Assembly: GCF_002113885.1 (NCBI RefSeq)
Contig: NW_018407597.1
Span: 379,711-443,710, forward strand
From: Mizuhopecten yessoensis
Lineage: Eukaryota
DNA: 64,000 nucleotides
Direction of reading: 5' to 3'
The position numbers and the translations under genes were made by a program. Positions 24,986 to 61,905 of the stretch are shown one piece after another. The stretch's first letter is position 1. Each line of letters starts with the position of its first letter. A model generated the notes under the pieces. That model saw only the letters and a program-made list of their open reading frames with translations, made no database searches and had not been told where the DNA came from.

Positions 24986-25806
24986 ATGAAGGCTGTGCTA
25001 ATTTCCATTGCCGTCGTGGCTTGTTGTATGATTGCTGTCAGGGGCGAGGCCTACGGTAACTATGGAAACGGACAGTACGTGCAAAAAGGACATACCAACC
25101 AATACAGCAAGGGTGGATACGCCAAGGGATACTCCACATATCCGACGTATTCCGGATATTACTCCGGATATTCCGGATACGGGCAAAACCCAGTTGCAAA
25201 GAAGGAGATTATTTTTGGGGCACCTTTATTCGCTCCTCCCCCCGCCGCTCCTTTACCAGCCGATAGTGGTTCCTTATTCGGCGGTGATGGGACAATTTTT
25301 CGTAAGTAATTTTTCGTGGCAGTTTTTGAGTTAATTAAGATTATGAGTATATCCTAGTTGGCATTTTAGAATACCGAGCATATACTTATAGGTGATAAGA
25401 GCTAAATGCGATTAAAATCGTGATAAGATGTATATTTGTTGTATGTACTGTCATTTGATAGTTTTTTGGAACGCTTTGGCAAGGCCGTATAGATTTATTC
25501 TAAACAATATGGGAACCTGTTAGTAAAAAGCATGCATAATTAATAAGCAGCAATGTAAGTTTGTTACATATTAACAAATACAAACCCTTGTTTGATATTG
25601 TAAACGTATAAAAGCATATTTTTTTTAAAGATGTATCATATAAATATTTGATTATAAACTATTTTGTATCTATGTATAACCTGTCATAGTTTGGCGAGGC
25701 TAATTTCGTGTTTTCATCATACTCTATCAATTATGATTCCGTTTACGTTTCAGTGTTCCTCCTGTTTCTGCTCCCTATTCTTCTTAATGACAACCTCTCT
25801 GGTTAA
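24986..25806 (+). CDS. Gene A: secreted Gly/Tyr-rich protein with a hydrophobic C-terminal tail (122 aa), shell-matrix-like
   Basis: Exons 24986-25301 and 25754-25806 (phase-1 intron, C|GTAAGT...TTTCAG). Signal peptide MKAVLISIAVVACCMIAVRG, GY/SGY-rich core, APPPAAP, then LFGGDGTIF|LFLLFLLPILLNDNLSG*. 3'-UTR intron 25821-27121, last exon from 27122 with AATAAA near 27200. Confidence 0.88.
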
Positions 25807-25924
25807 GAACGGGCTGCCCAGTAAGTCAATGTCTGTCTTATGTAAGTATATACACATTATATTTACATTTGCATGGCGTTGTCACTATCTAGGATATTTG
25901 AAAGATGTGTCGTTGATGGGACTT

Positions 25925-26710
25925 TAAATACTATGCGCCACGAGACATAATTCTTAGCGTATTACTACAACACCGACCGGAACTACAATATCCAATGTAA
26001 CTAAACATAACGGCTGCTGAAATATCGCTGGGCATTGTGAGACTTGACAATGTAATTGTAAATGTGCAAAAGAAAAAAGAAAATATAAAAAACAACTTTT
26101 ATTACAACAAAAACAAGACCAAAGTCTGCAATATCGTACAAAATGCACACCGGTTTAAATAACCAACTTTAACACCCATGCAATTCATCAGAAATATCGT
26201 CTGTTACACTGCACTGATCAACAGGAGTTCGTTACAAATGTCTGAAATACATATATGCTATAGACCTACTGACATATATGCTATAGATCAACTGATATGA
26301 GTCACAGCACACATAAACATACACATGGCATATGTGTATTTCAGACATTTGTAACGAACCCCTGTGCTCCGTCGCAAGATCACTCACCTCAAACGCTTTC
26401 AGTATCAGGCGTCTCGCAGCCACGGTTTCCTCAGTTTCTGAAGACATGTCAAATAACGAGGCTGTTGTAGAATCTACCGACTGTAGTCAGATTCCTATAC
26501 AATCAACAAATAAATTCACGTCTGGATTCTTCACAAATTCGAACTTTCCTCTCTGCTCATTTAACTTCCAAAAATAACTCACTCCCCCGTGGAGGGCAAG
26601 GTCGGATTTACGCTGTTCATTGTATTTATCCATGCGCATCATAATGCGCTAGCACGCATTATGATGTTTCTTGCAAAGCTGTGTCATTTAAATAGATCAT
26701 AAATACAATA
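25925..26710 (+). mobile_element. Possible degenerate Crypton-like remnant in the 3'-UTR intron of gene A
   Basis: ORF 26332-26577 ends FTSGFFTNSNFPLCSFNFQK, resembling Crypton C-termini. An ISNVTKH fragment lies near 25990. Palindrome CATAATGCGCTAGCACGCATTATG near 26640. Confidence 0.35.
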
Positions 26711-28076
26711 CAAAACCAGTTCAATACTTAAATGTCAAGTGTTCAGTATCGAAAACTTTCCATACTTCACGGACATCTGAGATTGATAATAATAATAATA
26801 GGCCTTTCATTCGATACAGTCAAGGTAAGGTTGAAGGTAAATGCATTAGGCTGCTTAACATACTCATCTGATAAGAAATTAGAAATTTTATTTCATGCTG
26901 ATTTTATTTAATAATTATCATACAAGTATCGGTTATTGCCTCACACATGAAATTGGATATTAACAATTAATCGTTTTTCGGTCAGCTGTATCCAAAAACC
27001 TTTACCATTATACTAGTTTGTACGTCTATTACATTCCTGAAACATGTAGGTTTAAGCTACGTTATATGTTTTACATGTATGTACAATGTATATTAACAGC
27101 ATTTTTACGTTTTTATTTTAGGTATCACACACTACGGGAAGATGATGCAGGTTTCATGGGAATATTCTTCGGATTGCTTTTTTTTTTAATAATATGTCAA
27201 ATAAAAAATTAAATATTTTTTAATTAAAATAAAAATATGAGTATATGTGTTTTATTTTCTAAAGTTAACAATGTGCGAATATATTTAGACATTCATGCCA
27301 ATGACGATATCTGTGTTTGTAAATATAACTGTAGTAAGACCACTAAATGACAAAAAATGTATAAAGAACAAAAAAACTGCATGTACATCACCACACAGAT
27401 GCTGATGTTATCTTCCACAAAATTAACAGCAGTATCATTATATCTTCTGGACATTGTTAAGAGTTATGACACTATTCCGTCAATTTTCGATATGTATCAG
27501 ATTAGCTAAATCCCTTCGTGACGTCACATTTAACGAGATGACGACATGAATCAATGGCAAACCGTTAAATGGATTCATATGCATTTCTAAATATAAAGAT
27601 TTGTGAGAGTAAATAGTTTTAATAAATACTATTTAAGGTAGCGCATATTTTAAAACAAAATAGATTAAAGTAGGGCACCCTGAGCAAGGCCTCTGAAAGA
27701 GTGATTTAAGACAAACTTATATCTTTTGTAAGTAAGGATTGAAAAGAATACTCATTAGAAAAACAAAGCTAGGAAACGCATATTTTGAAATGTTGTGAGT
27801 CATTGCAGCAAAATTGCAAAACAAACTCAACATTCACTGCAATATTCCGTCAAATAAGGACTCGTCAGTGTTACTATAGATCAAAAAATAAATATGCGAT
27901 TCAAATGTGCACCGAAATGTGTACTTAGAAAAACAGCGAAAGGAAAAAGTGCCCATAATAAAACCATTAATATAATAAAAACTGTTATTTTGACTACACC
28001 AGATAATTTAGTCGAAGTAGTGTTTTAAAAGTTTTATTATATGCATGATCATTTCTCGCAATCACATTGGTCGGAT

Positions 28077-28268
28077 CCTATTCCGTCTTTGCGTATTGCA
28101 GAGTTTTCTTCTCTTGGGGGGGCAGGTATTGATTGTTACGTCATTGGTTTGTGTGAGAAAATTACGTCGTTTTCTCAAAAATTGATGACTTTACTCTCTA
28201 AAACAAGTGACGTAACAATCAATACCTGTTCTCAAGAGAAGATAAGTCTGCAATATGCAAAGACGGAA
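28077..28268. mobile_element. ~190-bp foldback MITE, copy 2
   Basis: Near-identical to 18315-18505 and self-complementary. Confidence 0.88.
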
Positions 28269-36952: not shown

Positions 36953-37201
36953 ACATGAAACTAAAGAGCTCTCTCTCTCTCTCTTGAGTGATTTTTGATA
37001 AACTTCGTTCTTAATATTAAGTCATACGCAATCAATTAAGATTTTTTTTTTTTTTTTTAGTTTCAATTAAGTTTTTGAAAAATATATATCATTTTGCATA
37101 GTGTGTTTTAGTTACAGTTAAGTTTAAAAAGACCGAAAAGAAATGTCAATTTGACATCCATATCGAGTAAACTACTTCTTTTGTACAGATATTCAGTAAA
37201 G

Positions 37202-38040
37202 ATGAGAGCCGCCTGTGTCACACTTTTCGTTGTTGTCGCCGCCCTGGGCCTCAGCGCCTGTCTTGGACAGGATTGGGATGATGTTTACGATGACGATAAC
37301 TACTATGGGGTTCCACAGTATTCGAGCGGCGGATATGCGACGAGTTACCCTCAGTATGGTGGAATGACTTACGGAAATGGATACGGACAGGGATACGGAA
37401 ACGGAAAGGGATACGGAAAGGGATACGGACACGGTTACGGAAACGGAAAGGGATACGGAAAGGGCTACGGAAGGGTTGAGAGCACTGTTATCCGTACTCC
37501 CTACGTCGCCCCTATGTATCTGCCACCCCCACCTGCAGCGCCAGTGGGAGGATTCGGAGGATTCGGAGGAGGATTCGGAGGAGACGATGGCATTTTCGGT
37601 CAAAACAACGGTTTGAGTAAGTAGCCAAATTTCTGAAGCAGATGTTTCATACTTGATTCTTTAAATCAATTTAAAGAAAATAATGTTTTGCATGTCTGCT
37701 GTATTTTTAAACTACTAAAATGTTTTAAATGATTTTTATACTTCATATATGATAGCATTAGTTGGTGGAATTTGTTGTTTTATTTTAGATATATGATTAA
37801 AACATGTGAAATGGCTTGTTATGTGTAAGGAATTTTTCATTTCAACTTAAAATTAAAGTCTTAAATAACATTTATTTATATCATTGATATCTATATATAA
37901 ACCTAACAGGTTTATTAATACCTATTACACAGACTTTGTAAAATATTTATTTACTAAATTTCGTTTCGCATTTTTCAGTCTTGATGCTTTTGCTTCTGCC
38001 GTTACTGCTCAGCAACTCCAACGGAGGACTGCTCGGTTAA
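37202..38040 (+). CDS. B1: secreted Asp-/Gly-Tyr-Lys-/Pro-rich protein with a hydrophobic tail (158 aa)
   Basis: Exons 37202-37616 and 37979-38040. MRAACVTLFVVVAALGLSACLG-QDWDDVYDDDNYY...(GYGK/N/Q/H)n...PPPPAAP-GGFGGFGGGFGGDDGIFGQNNGL|ILMLLLLPLLLSNSNGGLLG*. 3'-UTR intron 38087-38408 and poly(A) signals near 38510-38525. Confidence 0.92.
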
Positions 38041-40997
38041 TTGGTTTATCCACCATGTTATTTATATCTCTGCAACTACTATCTATGTAAGTATCTCACA
38101 ATCTCTATATGAAACATAGGCTAAGAGTAAGATACAATGTAATTTACATTGAAGGAAAAGGAGCATACATACAGACCAATGTCTTATATTAATTTTTGAA
38201 AAGAAAATTTTCCTGGAATAGAATAAATTACAAATATATAAATATTTCATGTAATGATATACATTCAAGGGCAAGCAACCCCTATTTTTACATTGACTAA
38301 ATTATTTCAACAAAAATTAAATAAATATATATTCAAAGATACATGAATATATTTTAATCATATCAATAATGATTCTGTTTCTAATATGATGTGTTTTTCT
38401 CGTTTCAGATATCGCGCAATATCATGTTATGTTTGGTTCATCTGTGGAAATCCGTCTGTTCTTTGTTGTATTTAAATATTATTGTTGCTGCCGCTCATCG
38501 TTCATTAATAAAACATGTACAATAAACATTTGATTTTGAATTGATTTATGATACATACATATAGATTTTTGATATATGTTGTTTATTTCCAATTGTTTAC
38601 GTTGGACATTTTGCTATAATTGAGGGGAATACATATTACTTCCCGCAAAATTGAACACGACTTTACTTTGACTACAATACAGCTTCTAGTTTCCATGACA
38701 ATTTATATTCATATTTTATTTTTTATATATCATCGTTGACTTTAATGAGTGGTAATTAATTTGTATTGCTCTGAACTTTTCACAAAATGTCCAGTATAAA
38801 AAATGTGAATTCGAAATACCTATTATTGCTCACAAAGTGGAACAAGAGTTTATTTTCTAAAACACAGTTTTCCTTTTCATAAAAATAGATAAATTCATAT
38901 CGTTTTTTTCATAAATGCATCATCATTCAATTTTGTGTATAGTAATATGTATTTCACTGTAACGAAATGCGTACGTTTAAACGACGTATGCCAGTGAAAT
39001 GATGTCAAAAGTTCGAATCGGTTTCTGAAGCAGGAATGCGATATCAACAAACATCATTGTACTTGTTTTCACAACATTCACATTCCATGGAGTATAACTT
39101 TTATCCAGCGCTAGGTTTACTAAATTACTCTGTTTTACAAGTTCTCTCCAAATCAGAAACCATATGCGTTATATACGAACTGAAACATCACAAGAAAAGA
39201 AAAAGTTCCTATTCCGAAATCTTCTTGGAAATGAGAACATCCTGTCTACAACACTTTCAAGTAAAAGTGATGCTACCATGGCAGTAACCTAATTAGGGTA
39301 TTCAAGAGCTGTAGTGTAATTCACATGTTTGAAATAACATGTATGTCATATAAACATGGACATATATATAATCTTATTGTGTATTTATATTTAACAACAG
39401 ATGTTTTCCATTTTAAACACATCTTACGAAGCATTTTGCAGAATTACATAAATTCGGAAACGATAATACATACTATAAACAAGGACAGAAATTCCAATTG
39501 ATCGTACCTCGACTTATCCACTGCTGACCGTGCACGAATCAATTAAAACTGTTTCTATCAATGAATCGTTAATGCAGAAGTAAATTGATTAGATTATTTT
39601 GGATAATATAAGCAAAGCGTACAACATACTAAAACATCACAGTTCATTTGTGATATAGTAAGCTGAGCGGGAATTCGGTATTTTGGTTATCGATATACCT
39701 TAAAACCAAAAGCAGAGTGTGTTTAATATGCTGAAATGGCTGACACGATATCTGGAGTTTCATCAGGATCTACATTGCGTGCCCTGCTTTTTCATCGTTT
39801 ATTTCTATTTATTCATTCATTTAATAACAATAAGGAGATAATCTCAATCCATTTGCCAAAATTAATTTTTAGTTTATAAAAGTCAAATTTCCATCACGTA
39901 CATACAAAAACAAACTTTTGAAAAAAAACCACCCACGTACACCTCTGCTGGTCATGGATACAATAATAATAAATTATATTTCTTCTCATAAGCTTTTGAT
40001 TGGCGTATTAATATATAGCATGTCATATCAGTCGGTGCAGTCATAATAGAGTAAACAACGTGACATCATCGGAATGTATACATTTAACAATGTATTTATA
40101 CATTTCACCAATGTATCTTTTGCATGAATACACTAATGAGTTGTACAAAACTTGTATCCCCGGTACTTCTGTTTACTATCGAAAATAGCAATGGAAACCC
40201 CCGGATTGTTGACGTACACATATGTACACGGTGTATGTATTACTACGTACACGAGAGTGACCGTCGATATCGAGTGATAATGACAATGACCTCAACAAAG
40301 GTTATTGAGTCAATTACACTTGAAACTGTAAATATTGTATTTTATCGATAAACAAGTTGGAGCGCGTGAGCACAGCGTTATGAGGAGAGTATTGTATTTT
40401 TCATATATTATTTGACTTAATAATTAGTATATTGACTGATGATTCCTTAAAATGTAACAGCGAGCAAATATAACACATTATTTAGTTCCATGAGATATTA
40501 TTCATCCAATGAGGATGAAGGAAAATTTATTTCGTCTTACAATATACTTCATAGCAAAATTGACTTTCCTTCTAATGAGCCAGTATTAAAAACAAATGTA
40601 TGGTTATGTATTATAAAAAAAAGTAAAAAATGTATCATTCATTTTTAACAATAACAATTTTGTACCATCTACAGTAAAATTGATTGTAATATTCAACGTT
40701 TCTTTCACTCCACCAGTTTGTACTCCAGATAAATGATGACTAAACCTTTGTTCTGTGGCGGCTTCTTATTTTGCTCTTGATCTCTTGTGTTTATACTATG
40801 ATACCAAGTCCTTTATACACCTCTTTTAATTTGGTAACTTTTACTGCTTTAGATATAAAACAATTACATAGTTTGCTATCACACACAACGATATTAAGGA
40901 GATAATGTATATCAATGTTTATCACTTGTTATTTTATGAAATATTTCATTTATTTATTTATCATTTTTGTTTTTGTATAATTCATTAAATCAGTATG

Positions 40998-41240
40998 AAT
41001 GGTCGGCCGGCAGAGTGGTAGCGTATTCACCTTCCGCCTAAATGAATGGGCTTGATTCCCTGATCGGACGTGAAAAGGTACAGGGTCACCTGTCCGTCCA
41101 CTTGGGTGTCTCCGGGTATCCCGGTTTCCTCATACATTAAAATACCCTTGTGCGCTATATACTATACCACCAATGCCATAACGACTAATTAATTTAAGTT
41201 TCATAAATTTGTTTTATAATGTTGTTTATTAAGTAAAGTT
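40998..41240 (+). mobile_element. Degenerate V-like tRNA-SINE in unit 1 (paralogous copies at about 48635-48870 and 57617-57860)
   Basis: GATTCCCTGATCGGACGTGAAAAGGTACAGGGTCACCTG...CTCCGGGTATCCCGGTTTCCTC matches the 6935-7178 family. It inserted before the array amplified. Confidence 0.75.
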
Positions 41241-41722
41241 TGAATTAATAATTATCATACGTATGTGCCAGTGACAGGAAGTGTAAACAAAAAATATTTT
41301 TATTGATCATTTGGAATCGTTTTGATCTTGTCACAAAATAATACATTAGGTTTCCAATACATTATATAAAAATTATATAAAAACCCAGCATTTGAGTTTC
41401 AATAACATCATACAGTTGGTCTGACACATATTATCAAGAGATTTGTTAACGTATTTGAAATTCGTTTTTTAATTTGAAATTTTTCCGAAAATGTAAACAT
41501 ACATATGCTATTCTATTAACAATTATTAATATTTAATTGCCTATATTCACTATTCAAAGTTCTTCACGTATTACTGTTTGGAATTTAAACATCTTGAAAT
41601 TATTTCATGGAAAGATGCTACGTATAAGGAACAATGTTACTTTAAAGGCTAAACTAATTTAAATTACGTACATTCCTTGACCATATCGAAGTGGTGCTGT
41701 CAACGAAGTGGTACTGCTGTGA

Positions 41723-44256: not shown

Positions 44257-44467
44257 ATACACAAAGCTTCACGATTTCTGAAAAGTTCTCCTCATATTTA
44301 CAAACCAATATGTGATATTATGTTTGTTTAGTTTATATTTGGAAATTACAATTTAGCCTTATATTTTTAACTTTGATATATATATTTCTATATTTTGAAG
44401 CAAATTCCTTTAATGCCTTTCGCTTGACAGTATGCTTTGTTTTCTGTGTTACAGATATTCCGCCAAT

Positions 44468-48200: not shown

Positions 48201-51200
48201 ATCCTTCTAATGAGCCAATATTAAAAACAAATGTATGGTTATGTATTATAAAAAAAAGTAAAAAATGTATCATTCATTTTTAACAATAACAATTTTGTAC
48301 CATCTACAGTAAAATTGATTGTAATATTCAACGTTTCTTTCACTCCAACAGTTTGTACTCCAGATAAATGATGACTAAACCTTTGTTACGCGCCGGCTTC
48401 TTATTTTGCTCTTGATCTCCTGTCATTATACTATGATACCAAGTCCTTTATACACCTCTTTTAATTTGGTAACTTTTACTGTTTTAGATATAAAACAATT
48501 ACATAGTTTGCTATCACACACAACGATATTAAGGAGATAATGTATATCAATGCTTATCACTTGTTATTTTATGAAATATTTCATTTATTTATTTATCATT
48601 TTTGTTTTTGTATAATTCATTAAATTATTATGAATGGCCGGCATAGTGGTAGCGTACTCACCTTCCACCTAAATGAATGCGCTTGATTCCTTGATCGGAC
48701 GTGAAAAGGTACAGGGTCACCTGCCCGTCCACTTGGGTGTCTCCGGGTATCCCGGTTTCCTCATACATTAAAAAACCCTTGTGCGCTACATACTATACCA
48801 CCAATGCCATAATGACTAATTAATCTAAGTTTCATAAATTTGTTTTATAATGTTGTATATTAAGCAAAGTTTGATTTAATAATTATCATACTTATGTGCC
48901 AGTGACAGGAAGTGTAAACAAAAATTATTTTTATTGATCATTTGGAATCGTTTTGTTCTTGTCACAAAATAATACATCGGGTTTCCAATACATTATATCA
49001 AAATTATATAAAAACCCAGCATCTGAGTTTTAATAACATCATACAGCTTGACTGATACATGTTATCAAGAGATTTTTTAACGTATTTAAAATTCGTTTTT
49101 TAATTTGAAATTTTTCCGAAAATGTTAATATACATATGCTATTCTATTAATAAGTATTTATATCTAATTGCTTATATTCACTGTTCAAAGCTCTACACGT
49201 ATTCCTATTTAGAATTAAACGTCTTGAAATGATTTCATGGAAAGATGCTACGTATAGGAAACAATGTTACTTTAAAGGCTAAACTAATTTAAATTACATA
49301 CATTCCTTGACCATATCGAAGTGCTGCTGTCAACGAAGTGGTACTGCTGTGAAGTAGAAGGAGACAGATATTGCAAGAAAAACAGGGAAACCAATAGATT
49401 ATATTCAATGCGTATATGTGAGTTATCGATGTTTTAAAAATAAAATTTCTTTACCGAATTCTACACTCTAAATCATAAAAAGATGAAAAGGGATGATGTA
49501 AATACGTGGAAAGAACTAACTATGTTTTCAATTTTATCCATTTCCGGCGCAGTCGGTAACTCTTACTTTAGTATGAGGTTATTTGGAAGTGTACACTGTT
49601 GCTGCACATACTGTTGTGTTGCTCTTCGAATATATTTCGGCCTATGGACCCGGTTTTTTTTTGGAATTTGAGTGTTTAATTTATTGTAAGCTATAAGTAA
49701 CAGATTTTTTGGGGGAAATTCGAAAGTTTGCGCCTGTTAGGGGAATTGCTGAAACGTATTTGTAAACGCAAATATCCTTATTTATCGTAGATACAGCAAA
49801 TATACCATATCTAGACGTTTTGTAGAAATTAAACTGTTTAGCTATGCTTCGTCAGTTTTCACATTTCAAGACAATGTATGTATCAACGCAATGTCTGTAA
49901 CTTTGAAATTTGATGAGTTCAAATAACCACCTTCTTTTGGGAAATATCTGTGCTTGTCTTCTTCTGTGATTGAGGTTCTTTTTCCTAATACATTTGTACT
50001 ATATCTATCAACATTCAAAGAAATGGCTCCGAATTATACGCACATTGGACGTTTGAGTAATATTTCATAGCATTAACTAAACCGTGCTCGGAGATAGTGA
50101 AATACCCAGATCATTTACAAAGCATGTATAAACTACCTATAAAAATAATTGTAGAATGTTGCAAACTGAAAAACTGTTTCCGATTCAAACCACTCTTGAC
50201 CGAAGTCTTATTTAACATTGAAAACATAAGTCGAATTCCCAATATATTTCAAATTGAGAGAGAATATTTTGTTGTAATGACTACAAAGTGTCCAAAGGAA
50301 CATGTAATAATCACATAAACATGTAATACCCGATATCTGAGAAAATGTGTCAACGTTTATGTTCCATTAAAAACTAAAACGTACACCTAATGATATCGTT
50401 TTCATGGTAACTATTTTACAAATTTACATTTATACCCCTTATTATCAAATAAACAAACTACCTGTTTTAGGATAACACTTGTTGGTACATGAAAATATAC
50501 ATTATTATTAATTACACAAGCGACTTGTTTCAGGAAAATAATACTTATAGTGAAATGAAAACAAACCTTATTTTTAAATATACAAGCTACCATTTTAAGG
50601 ATTACAATGGTTTTCTTAAAATTGAAAATATGCAAGTATCCCATTTTCGTTGTTTGGTACTCATCACTTCGAACAAAAAGATAATGCTATATTGTTTTCG
50701 TTCATATCAACATTAATGCCAAAGATTTCAACGTAATTCAATTTAACATGTATGATCATTCAGAAATTTACAATTAATATAATGTAAACAAGCTTTCAAA
50801 CACATTTTATCTAATCTAATTTAATATACCTTCAGTCGGACTTTGTGGTTAAATGTAATGTCTTGCAATAAATTAATTAATATATAAAATACTACAAAAC
50901 AATTTATGTACCATTAACAAATTGATAAAAATGAACAGATTTACATGTGGAAAGACCTTGTAGTGACTTCTGTTGTTAAAAATGCTACCCTGCAAATTGA
51001 TATATTGCGAAGGGAACTACACGAAATATGTTTCAACAGATATTTGTTTGAAGGAGATACAGTTTTACTTTTTAATCTGATTACGTATCAAAATAACACG
51101 ACAGCTTACTGTTACGAGAGCTTACATATTTCTCAACATATTACATGAAATGTAACATGTCCATAAGTTAACTAATAGCAAACGCCAATGCCAATACTTT

Positions 51201-51240
51201 TCCCGTTTCAACGAAACCCTTGATGGCTTACCTGTACAAA

Positions 51241-51457
51241 GAATTGCACAAGGTTAGACACCCGTCTGGCCTGTTTACATCATTGCATGCATCATGTCGT
51301 CTCGGCGATAGTAAGGAATATGCCGAAGGGCATCTAAAAAACGAAGTATAGCGGAAGCCGTTTCTTTTTCACATGGCATTGGAGGAATCGCTGAGTATAT
51401 ATAAGGGGTATATCCCAAGTCAATCGTCAGTATTTTACACCGTTCACTGAGGTAAAT
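51241..51457 (+). promoter_or_regulatory. B3 promoter: TATA about 51398, Inr A 51429, exon 1 51429-51451
   Basis: Same layout as B2. Donor is GTAAAT. Confidence 0.72.
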
Positions 51458-51667
51458 AAACACAAAGCTACACGATTTCTGAAAAGTTCTCCTCATATTT
51501 ACAAACCAATATGTGATATTATATTTGTTTAGTTAAATTTGGAAATTACAATTTAGCCTTATATTTTTAACTTTGATATATATATTTCTATATTTTGAAG
51601 CGAATTCCTTTAATGCCTTTCGCTTGACAGTATGCTTTGTTTTCTGTGTTACAGATATTCCGCCAAT

Positions 51668-52465
51668 ATGAGAACCGCCTGTGTCACCCTTCTTGTTGTC
51701 GTCGTCGCCCTGGGCCTCAGCGCCTGTCTTGGGCAGGAGGGGGATGATGTTTACGATGACGATAACTACTATGGTGTTCCACAGTATTCGAGTGGCGGAT
51801 ATGCGTCGAGTTACCCTCAGTATGGTGGAATGACGTACGGACAGGGATACGGACACGGCAAGGGATACGGCAAGGGATACGGAAATGGATACGGAAAGGG
51901 CTACGGAAGGGTTGAGAGCACTGTTATCCGTGCCCCCTACGCAGCGCCTATGCCAATGTATATGCCACCCCCACCTGTAATGCCCGTGGGAGGATTCGGA
52001 GGATTCGGAGGAGACGATGGCATTTTCGGTCAAAACAACGGTTTGAGTAAGTAGTCGAAATTTCTGAAGCAGATGTTTTATACTTGATTCTTTAAATCAA
52101 TTTATAGAAAATAATGTTTTGCATGTCTGCTGTATTTTTAAACTCATAAAATGTTTTAAATGATTTTTATACTTCATATATGAAAGCAATAATTTATGAT
52201 TTTTTTTTTATTATGATTACAAAATGTGAAATGGCTTGTTATGTGTAAGGAACTTTTAAACATTTCAACTTAAAATTAAAGTCTTAAATAATATTCACTT
52301 ATATCATTGATATATATATATATAAACCTAACAGGTTTATTAACACCTATTACACAGACTTTGTAAAATATGTATTTAATAAATTTCGTTTCGCATTTTT
52401 CAGTCTTAATGCTTTTGCTTCTGCCATTACTGCTCAGCAACTCCAACGGAGGACTGCTCGGTTAA
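51668..52465 (+). CDS. B3: paralog (146 aa)
   Basis: Exons 51668-52046 and 52404-52465. 3'-UTR intron 52512-52833. W-to-G change near the mature N-terminus (QEGDD). Confidence 0.92.
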
Positions 52466-54914
52466 TTGGTTTATCCACCATGTTATTTATATCTCTGCAA
52501 CTACTATATATGTAAGTATCTCACAATCTCTATATGAAACATAGGATAAGAGTAAGATACAATGTAATTTACATTGAAGGAAAAGGAGCATACATACAGA
52601 CCAATGTCTTATATTAATCTTTGGAAAGAAAAATTTCCTGAAATAGAATAAATTACAAATGTATAAATATTTCATGTAATGATATACATTCAAGGGCAAG
52701 CAACCCCTATTTTTACATTGAATAAATTATTTCAACACAAAATAAATAAATAAATATTCAAAGATACATGAATATATTTTAATCATATCAATAATGATTC
52801 TGTTTCTAATATGATGTGTTTTTCTCGTTTCAGATATCGCGCAATATCATGTTATGTTTGGTTCATCTGTGGAAATCCGTCTGTTCATTGTTGTATTTAA
52901 ATATTATTATTGCTGCCGCTCATCATTCATTAATAAAAAAAACATGTACAATAAACATTTGATTTTGAATTAATTTATGATACATTCATATAGATTTTTG
53001 ATATATGTTGTTTATTTCCAATTTTTTACGTTAAATATTTTGCTATAATTCAAGGGAATACATATTATTTCCCGCAACATTGAACACGATTTTAGTTTGA
53101 CTACAATACAGCTTCTAGTTTCCATGAAAATGTATCTTCACATTTTTTTTTTGTATATATCATCGTTCAGTTTTATGAGTGGTAATTAATATGTATTGGT
53201 CTGAATTTTTAACAAAGTTTTCAGTACAAACAATGTGAATTCGAAATACCTATTATTGCTCACAAAGGTGAACAAGAGTTTATTTTCTAAAACACATTTT
53301 TCGTTTTCATAAAAATAGATAAATTCACATCGGGTTTTTTCATAAATGCATCATTATTCATTTTTTTGTATCGTAATATTTATTTCACTGTAACGAAAAT
53401 GCGCACGATTAAACGACGTATGCCAGTGAAATGATGTCAAAAGTTCGAATCGGTTCCTGAAGCAGTAATGCGATATCAACAAACATCATGGTACTTGTTT
53501 TCACACCATTCACATTCCATGGAGTGTAACTTTTATCCAGCGCTAGGTTTACTAATTTACTCTGTTTTACAAGTTCTCTCCAAATCAGAAACCATATGCG
53601 TTATATACAAACTGAAACATCACAAGAAAAGAAAAAGTTCCTATTCCGAAATATTCTTGGAAATGAGAACATCCTGTCTACAACACTTTTAAGTATAAGT
53701 GATGCTACCATGGCAGTAACCTAGTTAGGGTATTTAAGAGCTGTAGTGTAATTAACATGTTTGAAATAACATGTATGTCATATAAACATGGACATATATA
53801 TAATCTTGTTGTGTATTTATATTTAACAACAGATGTTTCCCATATTAAACACATGTTGCGAAGAATTTGCAGAATTACATAAATTCGGAAACGATAATAC
53901 ATACTATAAACAAGGACAGCGATTCCAATTGGTCGTACCTCGACTTATCCACTGCTGATCGTGCACTTAATTAAAACTGTTGCTATCAATGAATCGTTAA
54001 TGCAGCAGTAAACCAAAAAGAAAAATACATTCTATATCACCAGGCAAAGTATCTTTTATCCAGATATTACAATTTCTCTTTGGAAAACTAAAAAATGGAA
54101 AGAAGAAGAAGTTAAACTGTTCCTCACGATTACAACTTGTACAGTAGTACCTTTACCTTAACCTATTCTTAACTTAGTAACCTTCTGTCAGTAAATAGTA
54201 ACTATTGGCCGAGGAATTGTGCTAATATGAACTATAAGTTGTCAGCCATTCGTGATCAAACCCAATATTCATGTTATTCAACGCCATAGTCTCAGTAGCG
54301 CCTCCCAGTCCTTATCGGTTGGCTTGCCAAATATCTTGTCTAACCTAGCGCTATTTGCCTGTTATAGTCATTTAATGCATTCCCTGTAGCTCGTCCCGCA
54401 TATTACCTTAGAGATAAGGGAGAGCCTTGATGTGGACACCAGTGTTATAGTTTGCAAGGCAGTGATTCTTTTCTGGTAATAAATTAATTAGATTATTTTG
54501 GGTAATATAAGCAAAGCGTACAACATACTAAAACATCACAGTTCATTTGTGAGATAAATAAGCTGAGCGGGAATTCGATAGTTTGGTTATCGACATACCT
54601 TAAAAGCAAAAGCAGAGTGTGTTTAATATGCTGAATTGGCTGACACGATATCTGGAGTTTCATCAGGATCTACATTGCTTTTTCATCGTTTTATTTCTAT
54701 TTATTCATTCATTTAATAACAACAAGGAGATAATCTCAATCCATTTGCCAAAATAAATTTTCAGTTTATAAAAGTCAAATTTCCATCACGTACATACAAA
54801 AACAAACTTTTGAAAAAACCAACACCCACGTACACCTCTACTGGTCATGGATACAATAATAATAAAGTATATTTCTTCTCATAAGCTCTTACGGCGTATT
54901 AATATATAGCATGT

Positions 54915-56636
54915 GATAAGCAGAGCTTTAAAACAGTTCTTGTAATTAATTAATTCAACTGAGGGCATTAAAATGTTGAAATGCATATTTTATATATCCG
55001 TCCAATTTTAAAATACATTTTTATGGAACAGAATGCGAATGACGACCTGAAATAGTAGAAAGTGTTCCATTATAACTAGCTCACATTGCCACAGGTGGTA
55101 TTCACTTCGCTTGGTTGTAAATATTATACCGAGAGAAGCTTAACACCCCTACAACTATGGTAAATTATCATACCAGAAATACAACTGCAAACAATGATGC
55201 AGAAGACGTTTACCCGTCAGGCACAACTGGAATGATTCTCGTTGTACTTTTAAACGGTCTCTATGTAAAATTTCCTTTGTTCGTTTTTTACGCTAGTTTA
55301 AAAAAAATTGAATTCGAATTATGATTTGTTGATAATTCTGTATTTTCCTGTTTTTCCTGTTTTTCTGTCTTAAATAATAAATATTTAGAACAGCCGACCT
55401 TCCACTGTAAAACCTGACCAAGTTTCAATTGTATTTGATTGTCAATAATCTAATTTCAGTGTCAATCGATAATGTTTGTGGCAGCAGATCAGATTTAATC
55501 TACCTTGCTATATTGCCGATGGGGTTTAGTTCTTTAACTGATGACATAGGTTTCGCAAACGTTGAATTACACGGTAATAAAACTGTAAATGTCATTTTAT
55601 ATTGCTCTGAATTAACAAAAGAAAAAGATACTGCTCGGCAGATATACATTATCATCTTACAATAAACAATATCATCGTACACAGAATGCTTGTCCATTAG
55701 GAACTTTTAATGAGATGAAAATATGTATGGAAATATTGAAATGAGATGAAATCGAGGTCAATATCAATTTATATGTCCATATAACCACATATTCAACAAA
55801 GAATTTTTGTCTTTGATAAAATATTATAATTAAGGATTAACATTCTATTTAGTTTAGGTTATCGGGTGATAACTACAATGGAACTCGAAGCCGATTATGA
55901 TTAGGCCACCGTGACATGATACGACTAGACTAGGACTTATACGAACAAAATCGGCTGCATATCTTTAAAATAAACATCACATTGGTTTGTATGTTCGCTC
56001 TTAAACATGTAATCATAACTCATTAGCGATTATTCTTACTTCAAAGTTGATCTTTTCGGCTATTTTTAGCACAACTTGCAAAGTTGCGTAAGCCGATGCA
56101 CTCATACAATACTTCACTCGCGCTCGTTAACTGTTATAATAAAATCATATCGTTGTCATTCCATTTACAGTTTTTCTCAACGTTTATATTTAATACCCAA
56201 AGATGTCCCGTTTGATTCCGGAACGCTATAATATGGCACAAACGGCTCGCAGTTTTGGAACTCTCCCGTATTTTTGTAGACTCCACGGCAACGGTAACTA
56301 GGCATAGCGTCTACAAAATCATAAACATTCGAAGCAATTTGATAATTTTGATTTTAACTTCAATCATTAGAAAACCCAGTTCTTGAACTAACTATCAGTA
56401 TTTAGGCAGGCATAATTATGACATGTAGGTCATGTAAATTTATCGAACCCGTCCTGTGATTACCATTATCTACCAGTCTTATCGAGTGCAGTTGAAAATA
56501 TTACGGCAAAATTGTTGTTTATCGAACGTTATTGTCAAAATTGAATTTACTATTTTATTTCTGGGTACTGTTTACACCATGTCATCAAAGTAAGAGTATG
56601 TAAATGAACACGTAGAAAAACACAAAATCCAGCCGT
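54915..56636. other. ~1.72 kb segment present only in unit 3
   Basis: Unit 2 reads TAGCATGT|CCTGTCAGTCGG contiguously. Here the two halves are separated by 1722 bp, with GT at both junctions. Confidence 0.85.
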
Positions 56637-59600
56637 CCTGTCAGTCGGTGCAGTCATCAAAGAGTCGGGCGCTGTAAACAACGACGTCATCTGAATGTAT
56701 AAATTTAACAATGTATTTATACATTTCAACAATGTATCTTTTGCATGAATACACTAATGAGTTGTACAAAACTGGTATCCCCGGTACTTCTGTTTACTAT
56801 CGAAAATAGCAATGGAAACCCCCGGATTGTTGACGTACACATATGTACAAGATGTATGTATTACTAGGGGAACGAGAATGACTGTCGTTATCGAGTGATA
56901 ATGACAATATAACCTCAACAAAGGTTATTGAGTCAATTACACTTGAAACTGTAAATATTGTATTTTATTGATAAATAAGTTGGATCGCGTGAGCACAGCG
57001 TCATGAGGAAAGTTCTGTATTTTTCATATATTATTTGACTTTATAATTAGTATATTGACTGATGTTTGCTTAAAATGTAACTAAATAATATAACACATTA
57101 TTAAGTTCCATGATATATTATTCATGAGGATGAATGGAAATTTATTTCGTCTTATAATATGCTTCATAGCAAATTTGACTATCCTTCTAATGAGCCAGTA
57201 TTAAAAACAAATATATGGTTATGTATTATAAAACAAAAACAAAAAAATGTATCATTCATTTTTAACAATAACAATTTTGTACCACATTCAGTATAATTGA
57301 TTGTAATATTCAACGATTCTTTTACTCGACCAGTTTGTACTCCAGATAAATGATGACCAAACCTTTGTTCCACGCCGGCTTCTTATTTTGCTCTTGATCT
57401 CCTGTGATTATACTATGATACCAAGTCTTTTACACACCTCTTTTAATTTGGTAACTTTTACTGCTTTAGATATAAAACAATTACATAGTTTGCTATCACA
57501 CACAACGATATTAAGAAGATAATGTATTTCAATGTTTATCACTTGTTATTTTATTAAATATTTCATTTATTTATTTATCATTTTTGTTTTTGTATAATTC
57601 ATTAAATTATTATGAATGGTCGACCGGCAGAGTGGTAGCGTACTCACCTTACACCTAAATGAATGGGCTTGATTCCCTGATCGGACGTGAAAAGGTACAG
57701 GGTCACCTGCCCGTCCACTTGGGTGTCTCCGGGTATCCCGGTTTCCTCATACATTAGAATACCCTTGTGCGCTACATACTATACCACCAATGCCATAACG
57801 ACTAATCAATTTAAGTTTCATAAATTTGTTTAATAATGTTGTATATTAAGCAAAGTTTGATTTAATAATTATCATACTTATGTGCCAGTGACAGGAAGTG
57901 TAAACAAAAATTATTTTTATTGATCATTTGGAATCGTTTTGTTCTTGTCACAAAATAATACATCGGGTTTCCAATACATTATATCAAAATTATATAAAAA
58001 CCCAGCATCTGAGTTTTAATAACATCATACAGCTGGACTGACACATATCATCAAGTGATTTTTTAACGTATCGAAAATTCGTTTTTTAATTTGAAACTTT
58101 TCCGAAAATGTAAATATTCATATACTATTCTATTAATAATTATTAATATTTAATTGCCTATATTCAATGATTCTACACGTATTACTGTTTAGAATTTAAA
58201 CGACTTAAAATGATTTCATGGAAAGATGCTACGTATAGGGAACAATGTTACTTTAAAGGCTAAAATAATTTAAATTACATACATCTCTTGACCATATCGA
58301 AGTGCTGCTGTCAACAAAGTGATACTGCTGTGAAGTAGAAGGAGACAGATATTGCAAGAAAAACGGGGAAACCAATAGATTATATTTATTTCGTATATGT
58401 GACTTATCGATAACAGTAAGATGTTTTAAGAATGAAATTTCTTTACAACATTCTACACTCTAAATCATAAAAAGTTGAAAAGGGATGATGTAAATACGCG
58501 GAAAGAACTAACCATGTTTTCAATTTTATCCATTTCCGGCGCAGTCGGTAACTCTTACTTTAGTTTGAGGTTATTTGACGGGTACACTGTTGCTGCACAT
58601 ACTGTTGTGTTGCTCTTTGAATACATTTCGGCTCATGGACCCGGGTTTTTTCGGAAAATGAGTGTATAAGTTATTGTAAGCTATTACTAAAATATTTTTT
58701 TGGGGGGAAATTCGAAAGTTTGCGCCTGTTAGGGGAATTACTGAATCAAATTTGTAAACGCAAATATCCTTAGTTATCGTAGATACAGCAAATATACCAT
58801 ATCTAGACGTCTTGTAGAAATTAAACTGCTTATCTATCCTTCTTCATTTTTCACATTTCAAGATGTATGTATCAACGCAATGTCTGTAACTTTGAAATTT
58901 GACGAGTTCAAATAACCACCTTCTTTTGGGAAATATCTGTGATTGTCTTCTTCTGTGATTGAGGTTCTTTTTCCTAATACATTTGTACTATATCTATTAA
59001 CTTTCAAAGAAATGGCTCCGAATTATACGCACATTGGACGTTTGAGTAATTTTTCATAGCATTAACTAAACGGTGCTCGGAGATAGTGGAATACCCAGAT
59101 CATTTACTATGGATGATAAAAACTACATTTAAAAATAATTGTAGAATTTTGCAAACTGAAAAACTGTTTCCGATTCAACCACTCTTGACCAAAGTCTTAT
59201 CTAAAATTGAAAACAATAGGTCGAATTCCCAATACATTGTATATTTACAAATTTGTCATTGTTAGTAAAAAATATAAAAAGATGTTTTCATGATACGAAC
59301 GCTACATGTAGGAGAAAATTTTGTTGTAATGACTACAAAGTGTCCAAAGTAACATGTAATAATCATAAAAACATGTAATACCCGATATTTGCTGAGAAAA
59401 TGTATCAACGTGTATGTTCCTTAAAAAAACACCGTACACCTGATGATATCGTTCATGGTAACTATTTTACAATTTTACATTTATACCCCTTATTATCAAA
59501 TAAACAAACTACCTGTTTTAGGATAACACTTGTTGGAACATGGAAATATACATTATTATTTGATACACAAGCGACTTGTTTCAGTGAAACAATACTTATT

Positions 59601-60164
59601 GTGAAATGAAAATAAATCTTATTTTTAAATATAAGTATCCCATTTTTGTTGTCTGCTACTCATCACTTCGAACAAAAAGATAATGCTATTTTGTTTTCGT
59701 TCGTATCAACATTAATGCCAAAGATTTCAACGTAATTCAATTTAACATCTATGATCTTTCAGAAATTTACAATAAATACAATGTAAACACACTTTCAAAC
59801 ACATTTTATCTAATCTAATTTAATGTACCTTCAGTCGGACTTTGTGGTTAAATGTAATGTCTTGCAATTAATTAATTTATATAAAATACTACAAAACAAG
59901 TTATCTAAATAAAAAATTGATAAAAATGAATAGATTTATATGTGGAAAGACCTTGTAGTGACTTTCATTTGATCTGTTGTTAAAAATGCTAGCCCTTCAA
60001 ATTGTTATATTGCGAAGGGAACTACACGAAATATGTTTCAACAGATACTGTTACGAGAGCTTACATATTTCTCAACATTTTACATGAAATGTAACATGTA
60101 CATAAGTTAACTAATACCAAACGCCGACGCCAATACTCTTCCCGTTTCTGCTTACCTGTACAAA

Positions 60165-60381
60165 GCATTGCACAAGGTTAGACACCCGTCTGGCGTGTTT
60201 ACATCATTGCATGCATCATGTCGTCTCGGCGATAGTAAGGAATATGCCGAAGGGCATCTAAAAAACGAAGCATAGCGGAAGCCGTTTCTTTTTCACATGG
60301 CATTGGAGGAATCGCTGAGTGTATATAAGGGGTTTATCCCAAGTCAATCGTTAGTATTTTACACCGTTCAGTGAGGTAAGT
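60165..60381 (+). promoter_or_regulatory. B4 promoter: TATA 60322, Inr TTAGT (A 60353), exon 1 60353-60375
   Basis: Same layout as B2 and B3. Confidence 0.72.
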
Positions 60382-60604
60382 AAACACAAAGCTACACGAT
60401 TTCTGAAAAGTCCTCATATTTACAAACCAATATGTGATATGATATTTTTGTATAGTTTATATTTGGAAATTACAATTTAGCCTTATATTTTTAACTTTGA
60501 TATATATATTTCATATTTATATTTCTATATTTTGAAGCAAATCCCTTTAATGCCTTTCACTTCACAGTATGCTTTGTTGTCTGTGTTACAGATATTCCGC
60601 CAAT

Positions 60605-61905
60605 ATGAGAACCGCCTGTGTCACCCTTTTTGTTGTCGTCGTCGCCCTGGGCCTCAGCGCCTGTCTTGGGCAGGATTGGGATGATGTTTACGATGACGAT
60701 AACTACTATGGTGTACCACAGTATTCGAGCGGCGGATATGCGACGAGTTACCCTCAGTATGGTGGAATGACGTACGGAAATGGATACGGAAAGGGATATG
60801 GACACGGCAAGGGATACGGAAAGGGATACGGAAAGGGCTACGGAAGGGTTGAGAGCACTGTTATCCGTGCCCCCTACGCAGCGCCTATGCCAATGTATAT
60901 GCCACCCCCACCTGTAATGCCCGTGGGAGGATTCGGAGGATTCGGAGGAGACGATGGCATTTTCGGTCAAAACAACGGTTTGAGTAAGTAGCCAAATTTC
61001 TGAAGCAGATGTTTCATACTTGATTCTTTAAATAAATTGAAAGAAAAAAGTGTTTTGCATGTCTGCTGTATTTTTTTTACTTATTTGTAAACAAAATGCT
61101 TTTTAAATGTGCTAAATTTTCTATGTAATATTGGAGCAAATTTTACTGCATATCCCTTGTATATTGCTCATTTTAATGTTACTCAATTGAATAACTTTAA
61201 AAAGAGAAATGAAAATAACTTACATAAAAAGGTATGATGCGACAACATAAAAAACCTGTCATGTTTCTCAAGACGGCAAAAATGTTCAATAAAATGATTT
61301 TATTAACAAATGAATAAACCTAGCAAGAAAACTGTCCCGAAGTGAAGAAAAGCATTTTAATTTCTATCAGTTATTTTTATAAACTGACCTTTATGACGGG
61401 GTGTTCATTTTTGGTTACCAGACAAGCGAAAATCTTCAATCGAACTTAATTCAACTAAATGTGTGAAACCTAAAAAAAACACCAAAAAACCCCAACGAAG
61501 CTGCAGCCATCTTTGTTTCAATTAAGTAGCTTATGGTGTTCCAGAGGCTATATAGAAAATATTAATATTTTTCTTTTAAAAGTGTGACATATCGGATAGC
61601 AACACGTTTTAATAATCAGTGTGTTATTAAATCTGTTGGGAGCTTAAATAACTTAAGCTCATAAAATGCTGATGCAGAGAATGGGGAATGTGTGTAATGA
61701 ATGAATTGAATATTTTAATCAAAATATTAAGTTGGCCTGAAATCATATTTATTAGTAATCAATTTGCATTGTACCTGAAATATGTCAAAACTCCTTGCAC
61801 TAAATCGTATAAATACTTATTAATTTCGTTTCGTATTTTTCAGTCTTCCTGCTTTTGTTGCTGCCATTCCTGCTCAGTAACTCCAACGGAGGACTTCTCG
61901 GTTAA
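60605..61905 (+). CDS. B4: paralog (146 aa) with a divergent 3' half
   Basis: Exons 60605-60983 and 61844-61905 (tail IFLLLLLPFLLSNSNGGLLG*). Intron 2 is 860 bp versus about 360 bp in B1-B3. 3'-UTR intron 61957-62280 and AATAAA near 62390-62405. Confidence 0.9.

What the first reader, a model, noticed from the sequence alone, without database searches (positions are those of the whole stretch)
24986..61905. Unrecognised family of block-structured secreted Gly/Tyr proteins with a separately encoded hydrophobic LLLLPLLL tail
Seen: A and B1-B4 share exon layout, a phase-1 intron and domain order. That order is signal peptide, acidic DWDDVYDDDNYY (B only), GY/GYGK repeats, a short Ile/Val strand (KKEIIF / ESTVIR), a Pro run (PPPAAP in A and B1), FGGD(D)G-IF, then an exon-3 tail (LFLLFLLPILLNDNLSG / ILMLLLLPLLLSNSNGGLLG). 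The ORF track misses the tail. Known: shematrins and related shell proteins are GY-rich but shematrins end in basic RKKKY-like tails, and Tyr next to Lys or His supports DOPA/quinone cross-linking. Inference: a distinct amphiphilic polyampholyte family (acidic Ca2+-binding head, cationic cross-linkable core, hydrophobic anchor) that could self-assemble or coacervate at a membrane or mineral interface. The ~11-residue Pro-kinked tail is short for a TM helix and might be GPI-like or an assembly motif.
Basis: partly seen in the sequence, partly recalled or inferred. Interest (0 to 1): 0.8.

Follow-up and report, generated by a model that had tools for sequence, protein, structure and literature searches.

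The report
Scallop glycine-tyrosine proteins, hydrophobic tail exon
The Yesso scallop carries a tandem cluster of small, exported glycine/tyrosine-rich protein genes, made in bulk in one RNA sample, whose greasy tail sits on its own exon and is shared with oysters; the family is real but unnamed, and its role (probably shell-associated building material) is untested.

Summary
The window is Mizuhopecten yessoensis. Genes A and B1-B4 all have the predicted layout: one exon encodes the signal peptide and Gly/Tyr core, a phase-1 GT..AG intron follows, and a small exon encodes a Leu-rich tail with one Pro.

RNA reads confirm the tail splice for two tail types, with about 5,300 and 5,400 junction reads. 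About 1% of the reads sampled from one run map to this locus. RefSeq and GenBank models of A and B3 already include the tail, but only as "hypothetical" proteins.

The scallop genome has at least 20 loci in five subtypes. Relatives occur in Pecten, Argopecten and Ylistrum, and in the oysters Saccostrea, Magallana and Ostrea. All share the same domain order, and the checked scallop and oyster genes share intron position and phase. There is no Pfam family, no paper and no shematrin match. The AlphaFold model is disordered apart from the signal and tail helices.

The acidic head and cationic core are B-subtype traits, not family traits (core pI 4.1-8.8). The most conserved part is the C-terminal module. 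Its layout resembles a GPI-attachment signal, but no predictor was available here. Tissue and function remain inferred. A related hidden-tail Gly/Tyr array was noted elsewhere in this genome by this scan.

The parts
24986..25301 (+). Gene A (RefSeq LOC110456143), main coding exon: signal peptide, GY core, KKEIIF, PPPAAP, FGGDGTIF. Ends in phase 1.
   Evidence: P0005 is a 100% match.
25754..25806 (+). Gene A tail exon (LFLLFLLPILLNDNLSG plus stop).
   Evidence: The tail is present in RefSeq model P0005.
37202..37616 (+). Gene B1 main coding exon, with a 10-residue longer GYG(K/H/N) repeat.
37979..38040 (+). Gene B1 tail exon (ILMLLLLPLLLSNSNGGLLG plus stop).
44468..44846 (+). Gene B2 main coding exon.
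45208..45269 (+). Gene B2 tail exon.
51668..52046 (+). Gene B3 main coding exon (KP79_PYT04331, OWF46134.1).
52404..52465 (+). Gene B3 tail exon.
   Evidence: Paralogue reads with this tail type cross the splice (2784+2680 reads).
60314..60373 (+). Gene B4 5'-untranslated exon 1, weakly covered.
   Evidence: Joint 60373->60590 GT..AG with 245 reads; reads begin at 60314.
60590..60983 (+). Gene B4 exon 2 (CDS from 60605). Depth is about 20,000 per read direction in RNA run X13.
61844..61956 (+). Gene B4 exon 3: tail codons IFLLLLLPFLLSNSNGGLLG, stop at 61903-61905, then 3'UTR.
   Evidence: Joint 60983->61844 with 5345 reads in X13, plus contigs in X1, X2 and X4.
62281..62374 (+). Gene B4 exon 4, non-coding. 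Transcripts end at 62373/62374.
   Evidence: Joint 61956->62281 GT..AG with 2201 reads, plus contigs in X1 and X2; read ends at 62373-62374.
37184..61075 (+). Tandem array of roughly 7.2-kb duplicated units carrying B1-B4. Units are 91-95.5% identical, including intergenic DNA.
   Evidence: Self-BLAST of the window.

Best explanation
SHOWN:
- The region holds five of at least about 20 Yesso-scallop genes of an unnamed family found in scallops and oysters.
- The proteins are small (about 105-170 aa), start with a signal-peptide-like N-terminus and have a low-complexity Gly/Tyr core.
- An AlphaFold model of B3, built on the 11-member family alignment, is disordered outside the signal and tail helices.
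- In the window genes and the oyster genes checked, one exon encodes the signal peptide, a variable GY-repeat core, a short conserved T-x-x-(Y/I)-x-P-Y-A-x-P strand and a Pro-rich stretch, ending in a (D/N)-x-G-[ILV]-F-G-G-[ND]-G motif.
- A phase-1 intron then leads to a small exon. It encodes a Leu-rich hydrophobic run (12-15 residues counting interrupting Gly/Thr/Pro) with a Pro in nearly all members, followed by 4-9 Asn/Ser/Thr/Gly residues.
- The tail exon is spliced in, and the B and C genes are transcribed at very high level in at least one RNA sample.

INFERRED:
- These are bulk extracellular building proteins of a secretory epithelium, most likely mantle, feeding the shell organic framework, periostracum or hinge ligament.
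- The Tyr/Gly core would give cohesion through aromatic contacts and enzyme-made Tyr cross-links.
- The conserved C-terminal module is laid out like a GPI-attachment signal: a small omega-like triplet, a 5-8 residue spacer, a short hydrophobic run and no long cytosolic tail.
- The nascent protein would therefore be lipid-tethered to the apical or vesicle membrane, then released into or built into the matrix.
For: Gene models and splicing:
- Searches give the exon boundaries. Junction reads number 5345 for the B4-type tail and 5464 for the B1-B3-type tail.

Expression:
- 118,257 of 12,435,228 sampled reads of RNA run X13 lie on this 4.6-kb stretch, including paralogues at 90% or more.
- Loose-end reads that match type C (QSYTEETIIR, 6733 reads) and the B5 copy (6984 reads) show that several paralogues are active.

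Family range:
- P0001-P0015 come from Mizuhopecten, Ylistrum, Argopecten, Pecten, Saccostrea, Magallana and Ostrea.
- The own genome holds at least 20 loci.

Conserved gene structure:
- The phase-1 intron sits at the same place in oyster genes and in unnamed Logan contigs.
- Two family genes lie 7 kb apart in Saccostrea.
- The C-terminal module is the best conserved block of alignment A4.

Protein properties:
- Disorder apart from the signal and tail helices.
- No Cys, and 9-23% Tyr in the core.

GPI-like layout:
- The hydrophobic run is 12-15 residues and the Kyte-Doolittle 19-residue mean is 1.8-2.3.
- A small triplet such as DDG, NNG, NDG, DEG, NQG, DDT or SGS lies 5-8 residues upstream in 10 of the 11 members examined.

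Parallel from the literature: Gly-rich proteins (shematrins) are among the most abundant mantle-edge transcripts in the pearl oyster (PMC6555990).
Against: - The tissue of run X13 is unknown because names are coded. No shell, periostracum or ligament proteome was linked to these proteins.
- The GPI reading rests on layout only; no GPI predictor could be run.
- The hydrophobic run is at the short end for GPI signals and is followed by 4-9 polar residues.
- Omega-like triplets are easy to find in any Gly/Asn/Asp-rich sequence.
- The tail keeps a fixed Pro and a following Asn between oysters and scallops. That is tighter conservation than a discarded signal would need.
- Some members have Arg right after the run, which looks more like a stop-transfer anchor.
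- Bulk structural proteins carrying lipid anchors are unusual in animals.
Confidence: 0.4

Rival explanations
1. The tail is kept in the mature secreted protein. It makes the protein an amphiphile whose Leu-rich end drives self-assembly (micelle-like particles, coacervates) or sticks it to lipid, chitin or other hydrophobic matrix.
For: - The tail sequence pattern (LLxLLxLxP[LIF]LL-N) is conserved across oysters and scallops. That suggests a function in the finished protein.
- The rest of the chain is disordered and rich in Tyr/Gly stickers.
Against: - By general cell biology, a run of 12 or more Leu exposed at the C-terminus of a secretory protein would be expected to be held back by ER quality control, unless it is membrane-embedded or processed.
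- No evidence on the mature C-terminus.
Confidence: 0.3
2. The tail is a short type-I membrane anchor. The proteins are cell-surface or secretory-pathway membrane proteins with almost no cytosolic part.
For: - The Kyte-Doolittle 19-residue mean of 1.8-2.3 exceeds the classical 1.6 threshold.
- Arg follows the run directly in type D, Argopecten A and Argopecten B.
Against: - The strictly hydrophobic run is only 8-15 residues and contains a helix-kinking Pro.
- Most members have no basic residue after it.
- The very high mRNA level fits a bulk export product better than a membrane resident.
Confidence: 0.1
3. The family is not shell-related. It could serve another secretion such as byssus or cement adhesive, an egg or capsule coat, or Gly/Tyr/His-rich defence peptides.
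For: - The tissue is unknown.
- Small, secreted, fast-duplicating, highly expressed genes also describe adhesives and antimicrobial peptides.
- Another scan note in this genome (s1-517131) leaves shell, ligament or attachment open.
Against: - The family is shared by oysters and scallops, whose adults differ in attachment mode but both build foliated calcite shells and a resilium (my own knowledge).
- Composition and size resemble known mantle Gly/Tyr matrix proteins.
Confidence: 0.2
4. These are just divergent members of the shematrin/KRMP group of pearl-oyster shell proteins.
For: Signal peptide plus GYG(K/H) repeats. Composition-driven automatic names such as 'glycine-rich protein-like' and 'keratin-associated protein-like'.
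Against: - The profile search over 1.84 billion representatives gave no Pinctada or shematrin hit at E<=1e-3.
- The conserved blocks lie outside the repeats.
Confidence: 0.05

Closest known systems
Shematrins and KRMPs (Pinctada Gly/Tyr-rich shell framework proteins)
   Same: Small secreted proteins with a signal peptide and Gly/Tyr(/Lys) low-complexity repeats. They sit in tandemly expanded gene families, and mRNA levels are very high (for shematrins, in mantle edge: PMC6555990).
   Different: - No detectable sequence relation outside composition.
- This family has a conserved central strand, a G[ILV]FGG[ND]G motif and a hydrophobic Pro-containing tail on its own exon, instead of a basic C-terminal end.
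- It is found so far in scallops and true oysters, not in Pinctada.
GPI-attachment signals, often on a separate last exon (for example the H exon of acetylcholinesterase; CD59-type signals with a Pro inside the hydrophobic run). From my own knowledge.
   Same: N-terminal signal peptide; a small-residue triplet; a 5-8 residue spacer; a 12-15 residue hydrophobic run; a short polar end; and the signal encoded by its own terminal exon.
   Different: - The run is short and the polar end is longer than usual.
- The sequence is far more conserved than typical GPI signals.
- No predictor or biochemical evidence here.
High-glycine/tyrosine keratin-associated proteins (KAP6, KAP21) and bacterial sulfur globule protein CV1, which are the names NCBI gave some members
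   Same: Gly/Tyr-rich composition and small size.
   Different: - The Pfam KRTAP hit is below its cut-off (16.9 against 21.1 bits).
- Those proteins have no comparable signal peptide plus tail architecture.
- The names are compositional artefacts.
Abductin (scallop hinge-ligament rubber protein). From my own knowledge.
   Same: Scallop secreted Gly-rich structural protein with FGG-type motifs.
   Different: Abductin is Met-rich with FGGMGGG-type repeats. This family has GYG(K/H/S) repeats, a Pro-rich block and the hydrophobic tail. No abductin sequence was available here for a direct test.

Membership tests
Shematrin / KRMP family | Detectable sequence homology to Pinctada shematrins or KRMPs | tested here: not met
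   The profile of 5 members searched against 1.84 billion representatives gave 13 hits. Every named hit is a scallop or oyster uncharacterised protein, and none is from Pinctada. Caveat: low-complexity filtering may hide weak relations.
Shematrin / KRMP family | Basic C-terminal motif (RKKKY-like) | tested here: not met
All members end in a hydrophobic run followed by an N/S/T/G-rich end.
Shematrin / KRMP family | Signal peptide plus Gly/Tyr repeat core | tested here: met
   The N-terminal helix spans residues 2-21 and the core is 16-38% Gly and 9-23% Tyr.
GPI-anchored proteins | N-terminal signal peptide and a C-terminal hydrophobic segment without a cytosolic domain | tested here: met
   Signal-peptide Kyte-Doolittle 19-residue mean 1.85-2.5. 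The tail run is 12-15 residues with 4-9 residues after it.
GPI-anchored proteins | Omega site of small residues followed by a 5-10 residue polar spacer | tested here: inconclusive
   Candidate triplets lie 5-8 residues before the run in 10 of 11 members. Such triplets are common in this composition.
GPI-anchored proteins | Positive call by a trained predictor, or PI-PLC release | not testable with these tools
   No GPI predictor is offline here. This needs NetGPI, PredGPI or big-PI, or bench work.
High Gly/Tyr keratin-associated proteins (Pfam PF11759) | Score above the Pfam gathering threshold | tested here: not met
   16.9 bits against a cut-off of 21.1 for B4. There is no hit for A.
Abductin | Met-rich FGGMGGG-type decapeptide repeats | tested here: not met
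   No such repeats appear in any of the five window proteins. The definition is from memory and no reference sequence was compared.

The most novel reading that the evidence does not exclude
The conserved last exon is a true GPI signal. If so, oysters and scallops, the two groups that build foliated calcite, deliver a bulk Gly/Tyr matrix protein to the shell-forming front as a lipid-tethered coat on mantle cell or vesicle membranes, and then release it or cross-link it into the matrix. This would be an animal counterpart of fungal GPI cell-wall proteins and a new route for shell-matrix delivery.
Probability: 0.2. Interest if true: 0.7.

Novelty: new variant of a known kind. Interest (0 to 1): 0.45.

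Why it matters
Mollusc shells are built on secreted low-complexity proteins. Most of the known families are lineage-restricted and poorly understood. This report defines a family that is:
- conserved between oysters and scallops;
- expanded to 20 or more genes in the scallop;
- among the most abundant transcripts in one RNA sample;
- marked by a small, sharply conserved C-terminal module on its own exon.

Automatic annotation has hidden it behind compositional names such as "keratin-associated", "sulfur globule protein" and "glycine-rich".

If the tail is a lipid-anchor signal or an assembly handle, it offers a concrete, testable mechanism for how a disordered Tyr-rich matrix is positioned at the cell-mineral interface. 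It also gives a simple motif for finding further members.

Tried and rejected
- Pfam scan of A, B1 and B4: only sub-threshold compositional hits (TrAA12, KRTAP). Rejected.
- ESM Atlas feature search: best score 0.76 to an unnamed cluster, below the level of a lead.
- AlphaFold2 with the 11-member alignment: mean pLDDT 52.5, disordered, so no fold search was worthwhile.
- Literature by accession or locus name (KP79_PYT04331, OWF46134, LOC110456143, LOC110456121, LOC125660043, LOC133202339, XP_ numbers, A0A8W8ITI1): no relevant paper. The only hit is a bacterial sulfur-globule paper.
- Word searches on scallop and oyster shell proteomes, periostracum and foliated layers found nothing describing this family.
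- Motif strings in supplements: none are held for PMC5854119, and there were no hits in PMC10543319.
- The look-up of encoding contigs for P0001 returned nothing; own-genome records may be left out there.
- Tissue of expression could not be obtained.
- N-glycosylation sequon after the tail: by eye, about half of the aligned members have one (sequences), so it is not a family feature.
- Antisense ORFs over the repeats (for example 37193-37603, minus strand) are mirror images of the low-complexity coding strand, not genes.
- Joined spliced models were not built or submitted. Exons were searched by reference, and the spliced forms were taken from database proteins P0001 and P0005.
- The N runs at 16688, 23122-23168 and 47763 were left as they are.


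Full report
**What is in the sequence**

ORF listing and direct reading confirm five genes on the + strand.

A script that looks for the donor, the phase and the first in-frame acceptor gave the following:

| Gene | Main coding exon | Tail exon |
|---|---|---|
| A | 24986-25301 | 25754-25806 |
| B1 | 37202-37616 | 37979-38040 |
| B2 | 44468-44846 | 45208-45269 |
| B3 | 51668-52046 | 52404-52465 |
| B4 | 60605-60983 | 61844-61905 |

- Every gene has a GTAAGT donor in phase 1 and a pyrimidine-rich CAG acceptor.
- The tails read LFLLFLLPILLNDNLSG (A), ILMLLLLPLLLSNSNGGLLG (B1-B3) and IFLLLLLPFLLSNSNGGLLG (B4).
- B1-B4 sit in roughly 7.2-kb tandem units that are 91-95.5% identical over genes and spacers alike.
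- Degenerate LINE reverse-transcriptase debris lies between A and B1.

**Is the tail exon used?**

One RNA-seq run of raw reads (X13, same species label) was laid on 57800-62400.

- Exon 2 of B4 is covered about 20,000-fold per read direction.
- 118,257 of the 12.4 million reads sampled lie on this stretch, about 1%. This includes paralogues at 90% identity or more.
- The junction 60983->61844 (GT..AG) has 2698+2647 reads. It is also present in contigs of three other runs (X1, X2, X4).
- Another 2784+2680 reads cross from 60983 into a tail exon of the B1-B3 type; 4809 of them carry the inserted letters TCTTAA.
- Two more introns appeared. A weakly used 5'UTR exon (about 60314-60373) joins 60590. 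A 3'UTR intron runs 61956->62281 (2201 reads), with transcripts ending at 62373/62374.
- Loose ends reading QSYTEETIIR (6733 reads) and YPMGYGGGY (6984 reads) match two further copies downstream of the window, type C and B5. Several paralogues are therefore active in the same sample.
- 'Goes back 30' and 'goes back 72' joints fit repeat-number differences among copies or alleles.

**Identity of the genome and annotation status**

- B3 is letter for letter GenBank OWF46134.1 (KP79_PYT04331, 'hypothetical protein', Mizuhopecten yessoensis), tail included.
- A is RefSeq XP_021362387.1 (LOC110456143), again with the tail. That model has an N-terminal extension upstream of the signal-peptide Met at 24986, which I take to be an artefact.
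The spliced forms used below are these database proteins.

**Size of the family**

The scallop's own genome holds at least 20 loci.

- On the window's contig there are eight: A, B1-B5 and two type C genes (P0006 and P0019, 'glycine-rich protein-like').
- Type D genes lie on C76666, C4057, C5196, C74597 and C812. They have GYGS repeats, STETIIRQPY, a Pro run and GNDGLFGLGGGSGLL. A phase-1 donor follows, and a candidate tail FLGLPLLLLLRNSNSG lies about 540 nt downstream.
- Two type E genes on C2220 resemble a Pecten maximus protein.

**Relatives elsewhere**

The word-based search and the exhaustive profile search together give the following named relatives:
- Ylistrum balloti, named 'sulfur globule protein CV1-like'
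- Argopecten irradians, two proteins
- Pecten maximus, 'keratin-associated protein 21-1-like'
- Saccostrea echinata, two proteins, one named 'keratin-associated protein 6-2-like'
- Magallana gigas, A0A8W8ITI1
- Ostrea edulis
- plus unnamed Logan contigs

Only 13 proteins out of 1.84 billion representatives reach E<=1e-3. One of these is a 4445-aa protein that matches only the Pro-rich region, and I take it to be a compositional hit. No Pinctada, Mytilus or other shematrin-type protein appears.

Gene structure is conserved:
- In Saccostrea the two genes are neighbours, 7 kb apart.
- In Saccostrea, Ostrea and the Logan contigs the coding sequence is split by a phase-1 intron. It sits zero to three residues into the hydrophobic run, as in the scallop.

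**What is conserved**

Across 11 members (A4):
- The GY repeats vary freely in length and sequence.
- The acidic head (W-D-x-D-D-x-Y-D-D-D) is present in scallop B and in one Saccostrea protein, and in weaker form in type C. It is absent from A.
- Core pI ranges from 4.1 to 8.8. The 'acidic head / cationic core' design is therefore a subtype trait.
- The invariant architecture is: signal peptide; GY core without Cys; a short T-x-x-(Y/I)-x-P-Y-A-x-P strand; a Pro-rich stretch; (D/N)-x-G-[ILV]-F-G-G-[ND]-G; then LLxLLxLxP[LIF]LL followed by 4-9 Asn/Ser/Thr/Gly residues, usually ending in Gly.
- AlphaFold2 with this alignment gives mean pLDDT 52.5. The only regular structure is the signal helix and a tail helix kinked at the Pro.

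**How it probably works**

*Shown:* genes for signal-peptide-bearing proteins, with a disordered AlphaFold model for B3, very highly transcribed, tandemly amplified, and carrying an old and conserved C-terminal module.

*Inferred, general role:*
- Composition, size, gene amplification and transcript abundance parallel the Gly/Tyr framework proteins of pearl-oyster mantle. In that species, glycine-rich proteins (shematrin-2) are among the top mantle-edge transcripts (PMC6555990).
- I therefore read these as bulk extracellular building proteins of shell-associated secretions (framework, periostracum or ligament).
- Tyr would provide aromatic cohesion and enzymatic cross-links.

*Inferred, tail:*
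- The run is 12-15 residues, and the Kyte-Doolittle 19-residue mean is 1.8-2.3.
- A small triplet (DDG, NNG, NDG, DEG, NQG, DDT, SGS) lies 5-8 residues upstream in 10 of 11 members.
- Most members have no basic cytosolic tail.
- This is the layout of a GPI-attachment signal, and such signals often sit on their own last exon (my knowledge).

*Against the GPI reading:*
- The run is short, and 4-9 polar residues follow it.
- Small triplets are cheap in this composition.
- The fixed Pro and Asn are better conserved than a discarded signal needs to be.

I rank the tail readings as follows: GPI-like tethering first (about 0.4), a retained amphiphilic assembly handle second (0.3), and a short membrane anchor third (0.1). 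No GPI predictor could be run here.

**Comparison with known families**

- Shematrin/KRMP: same kind of material, but membership fails on homology and on the C-terminal motif.
- High-Gly/Tyr keratin-associated proteins and sulfur globule protein: names by composition only. The Pfam KRTAP hit is below threshold.
- Abductin: no Met-rich FGGMGGG repeats.
- I found no paper naming these genes and no matching motif in the supplements held.

**Other notes of this scan**

- The scan has noted similar things elsewhere in this genome: a tandem array of a 79-aa Gly/Tyr protein with a hydrophobic tail (s1-517131), and another 'hidden hydrophobic C-terminal exon' gene (s1-550006). I did not test whether they belong to this family.
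- A note on this same window (s1-565295) speaks of an EF-hand gene beside the array. The PROSITE EF-hand loop pattern finds no match in any of the six frames of the window. A loop split by an intron would be missed.

**Verdict**

- This is a real, expressed, unnamed oyster-and-scallop family: a new variant of the known kind 'secreted Gly/Tyr low-complexity matrix protein', set apart by its conserved, separately encoded hydrophobic C-terminal module.
- Function and tissue remain to be shown.

Noticed in passing
L005:1525-1866 (G000:C4270:452221-452562, downstream of the window): A fifth B copy (B5) has TAG where B4 has CAG, right after the acidic head in the reference assembly. Yet about 7,000 RNA reads carry a sequence matching B5's distinctive repeat (YPMGYGGGY). 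The stop may be an allele or an assembly error, or a transcribed pseudogene.
   Followed up: partly
L015:2508, 5003, 7578 (G000:C4270:466208-471300): Three extra tail exons (VFAL(L/F)VLPLLLNGSTGHLG plus stop) sit in a 2.5-kb tandem repeat downstream of the first type C gene, with no Gly/Tyr exon before them. They may be partial duplicates or alternative last exons.
   Followed up: partly
window 61903-62374: The B4 stop codon lies about 50 nt upstream of a spliced 3'UTR intron (61956->62281). This is at the edge of the usual rule for nonsense-mediated decay, yet the transcript family is extremely abundant.
   Followed up: no
window 60774-60845: RNA reads show 'goes back 30' and 'goes back 72' joints inside the GYGK repeats. 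This indicates expressed copies or alleles with 10 or 24 more repeat residues. B1 explains the 30-nt case.
   Followed up: partly
window 4846-5406 (-) and 31600-34900 (-): Non-LTR retrotransposon remains. There is a clear RVT_1 domain at 4846-5406 (E 7.5e-23) and a decayed copy between gene A and B1 (weak RVT_1 at 33003-33575).
   Followed up: partly
window 22859-23233 (+), beside the N run 23122-23168: The RefSeq model of gene A starts in an ORF about 2 kb upstream, next to an assembly gap. This adds 57 residues before the signal peptide. The sequence is more likely a 5'UTR exon with a spurious upstream ATG.
   Followed up: no
window 41723-42582: A local 432-bp direct duplication, 98.8% identical, lies inside the B1-B2 spacer.
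   Followed up: no
window 37193-37603 (-), 44333-44881 (-), 51533-52033 (-), 60557-60970 (-): Long antisense ORFs rich in SVSLSVS lie over each B gene. They are mirror images of the GYGKGYG coding repeats, not separate genes.
   Followed up: yes
L030:3017-10782 (Saccostrea echinata JAVQLB010000047.1): Two family members lie 7 kb apart on the same strand in an oyster: one with the acidic head and one long GY type. The tandem arrangement of subtypes therefore seems old.
   Followed up: partly
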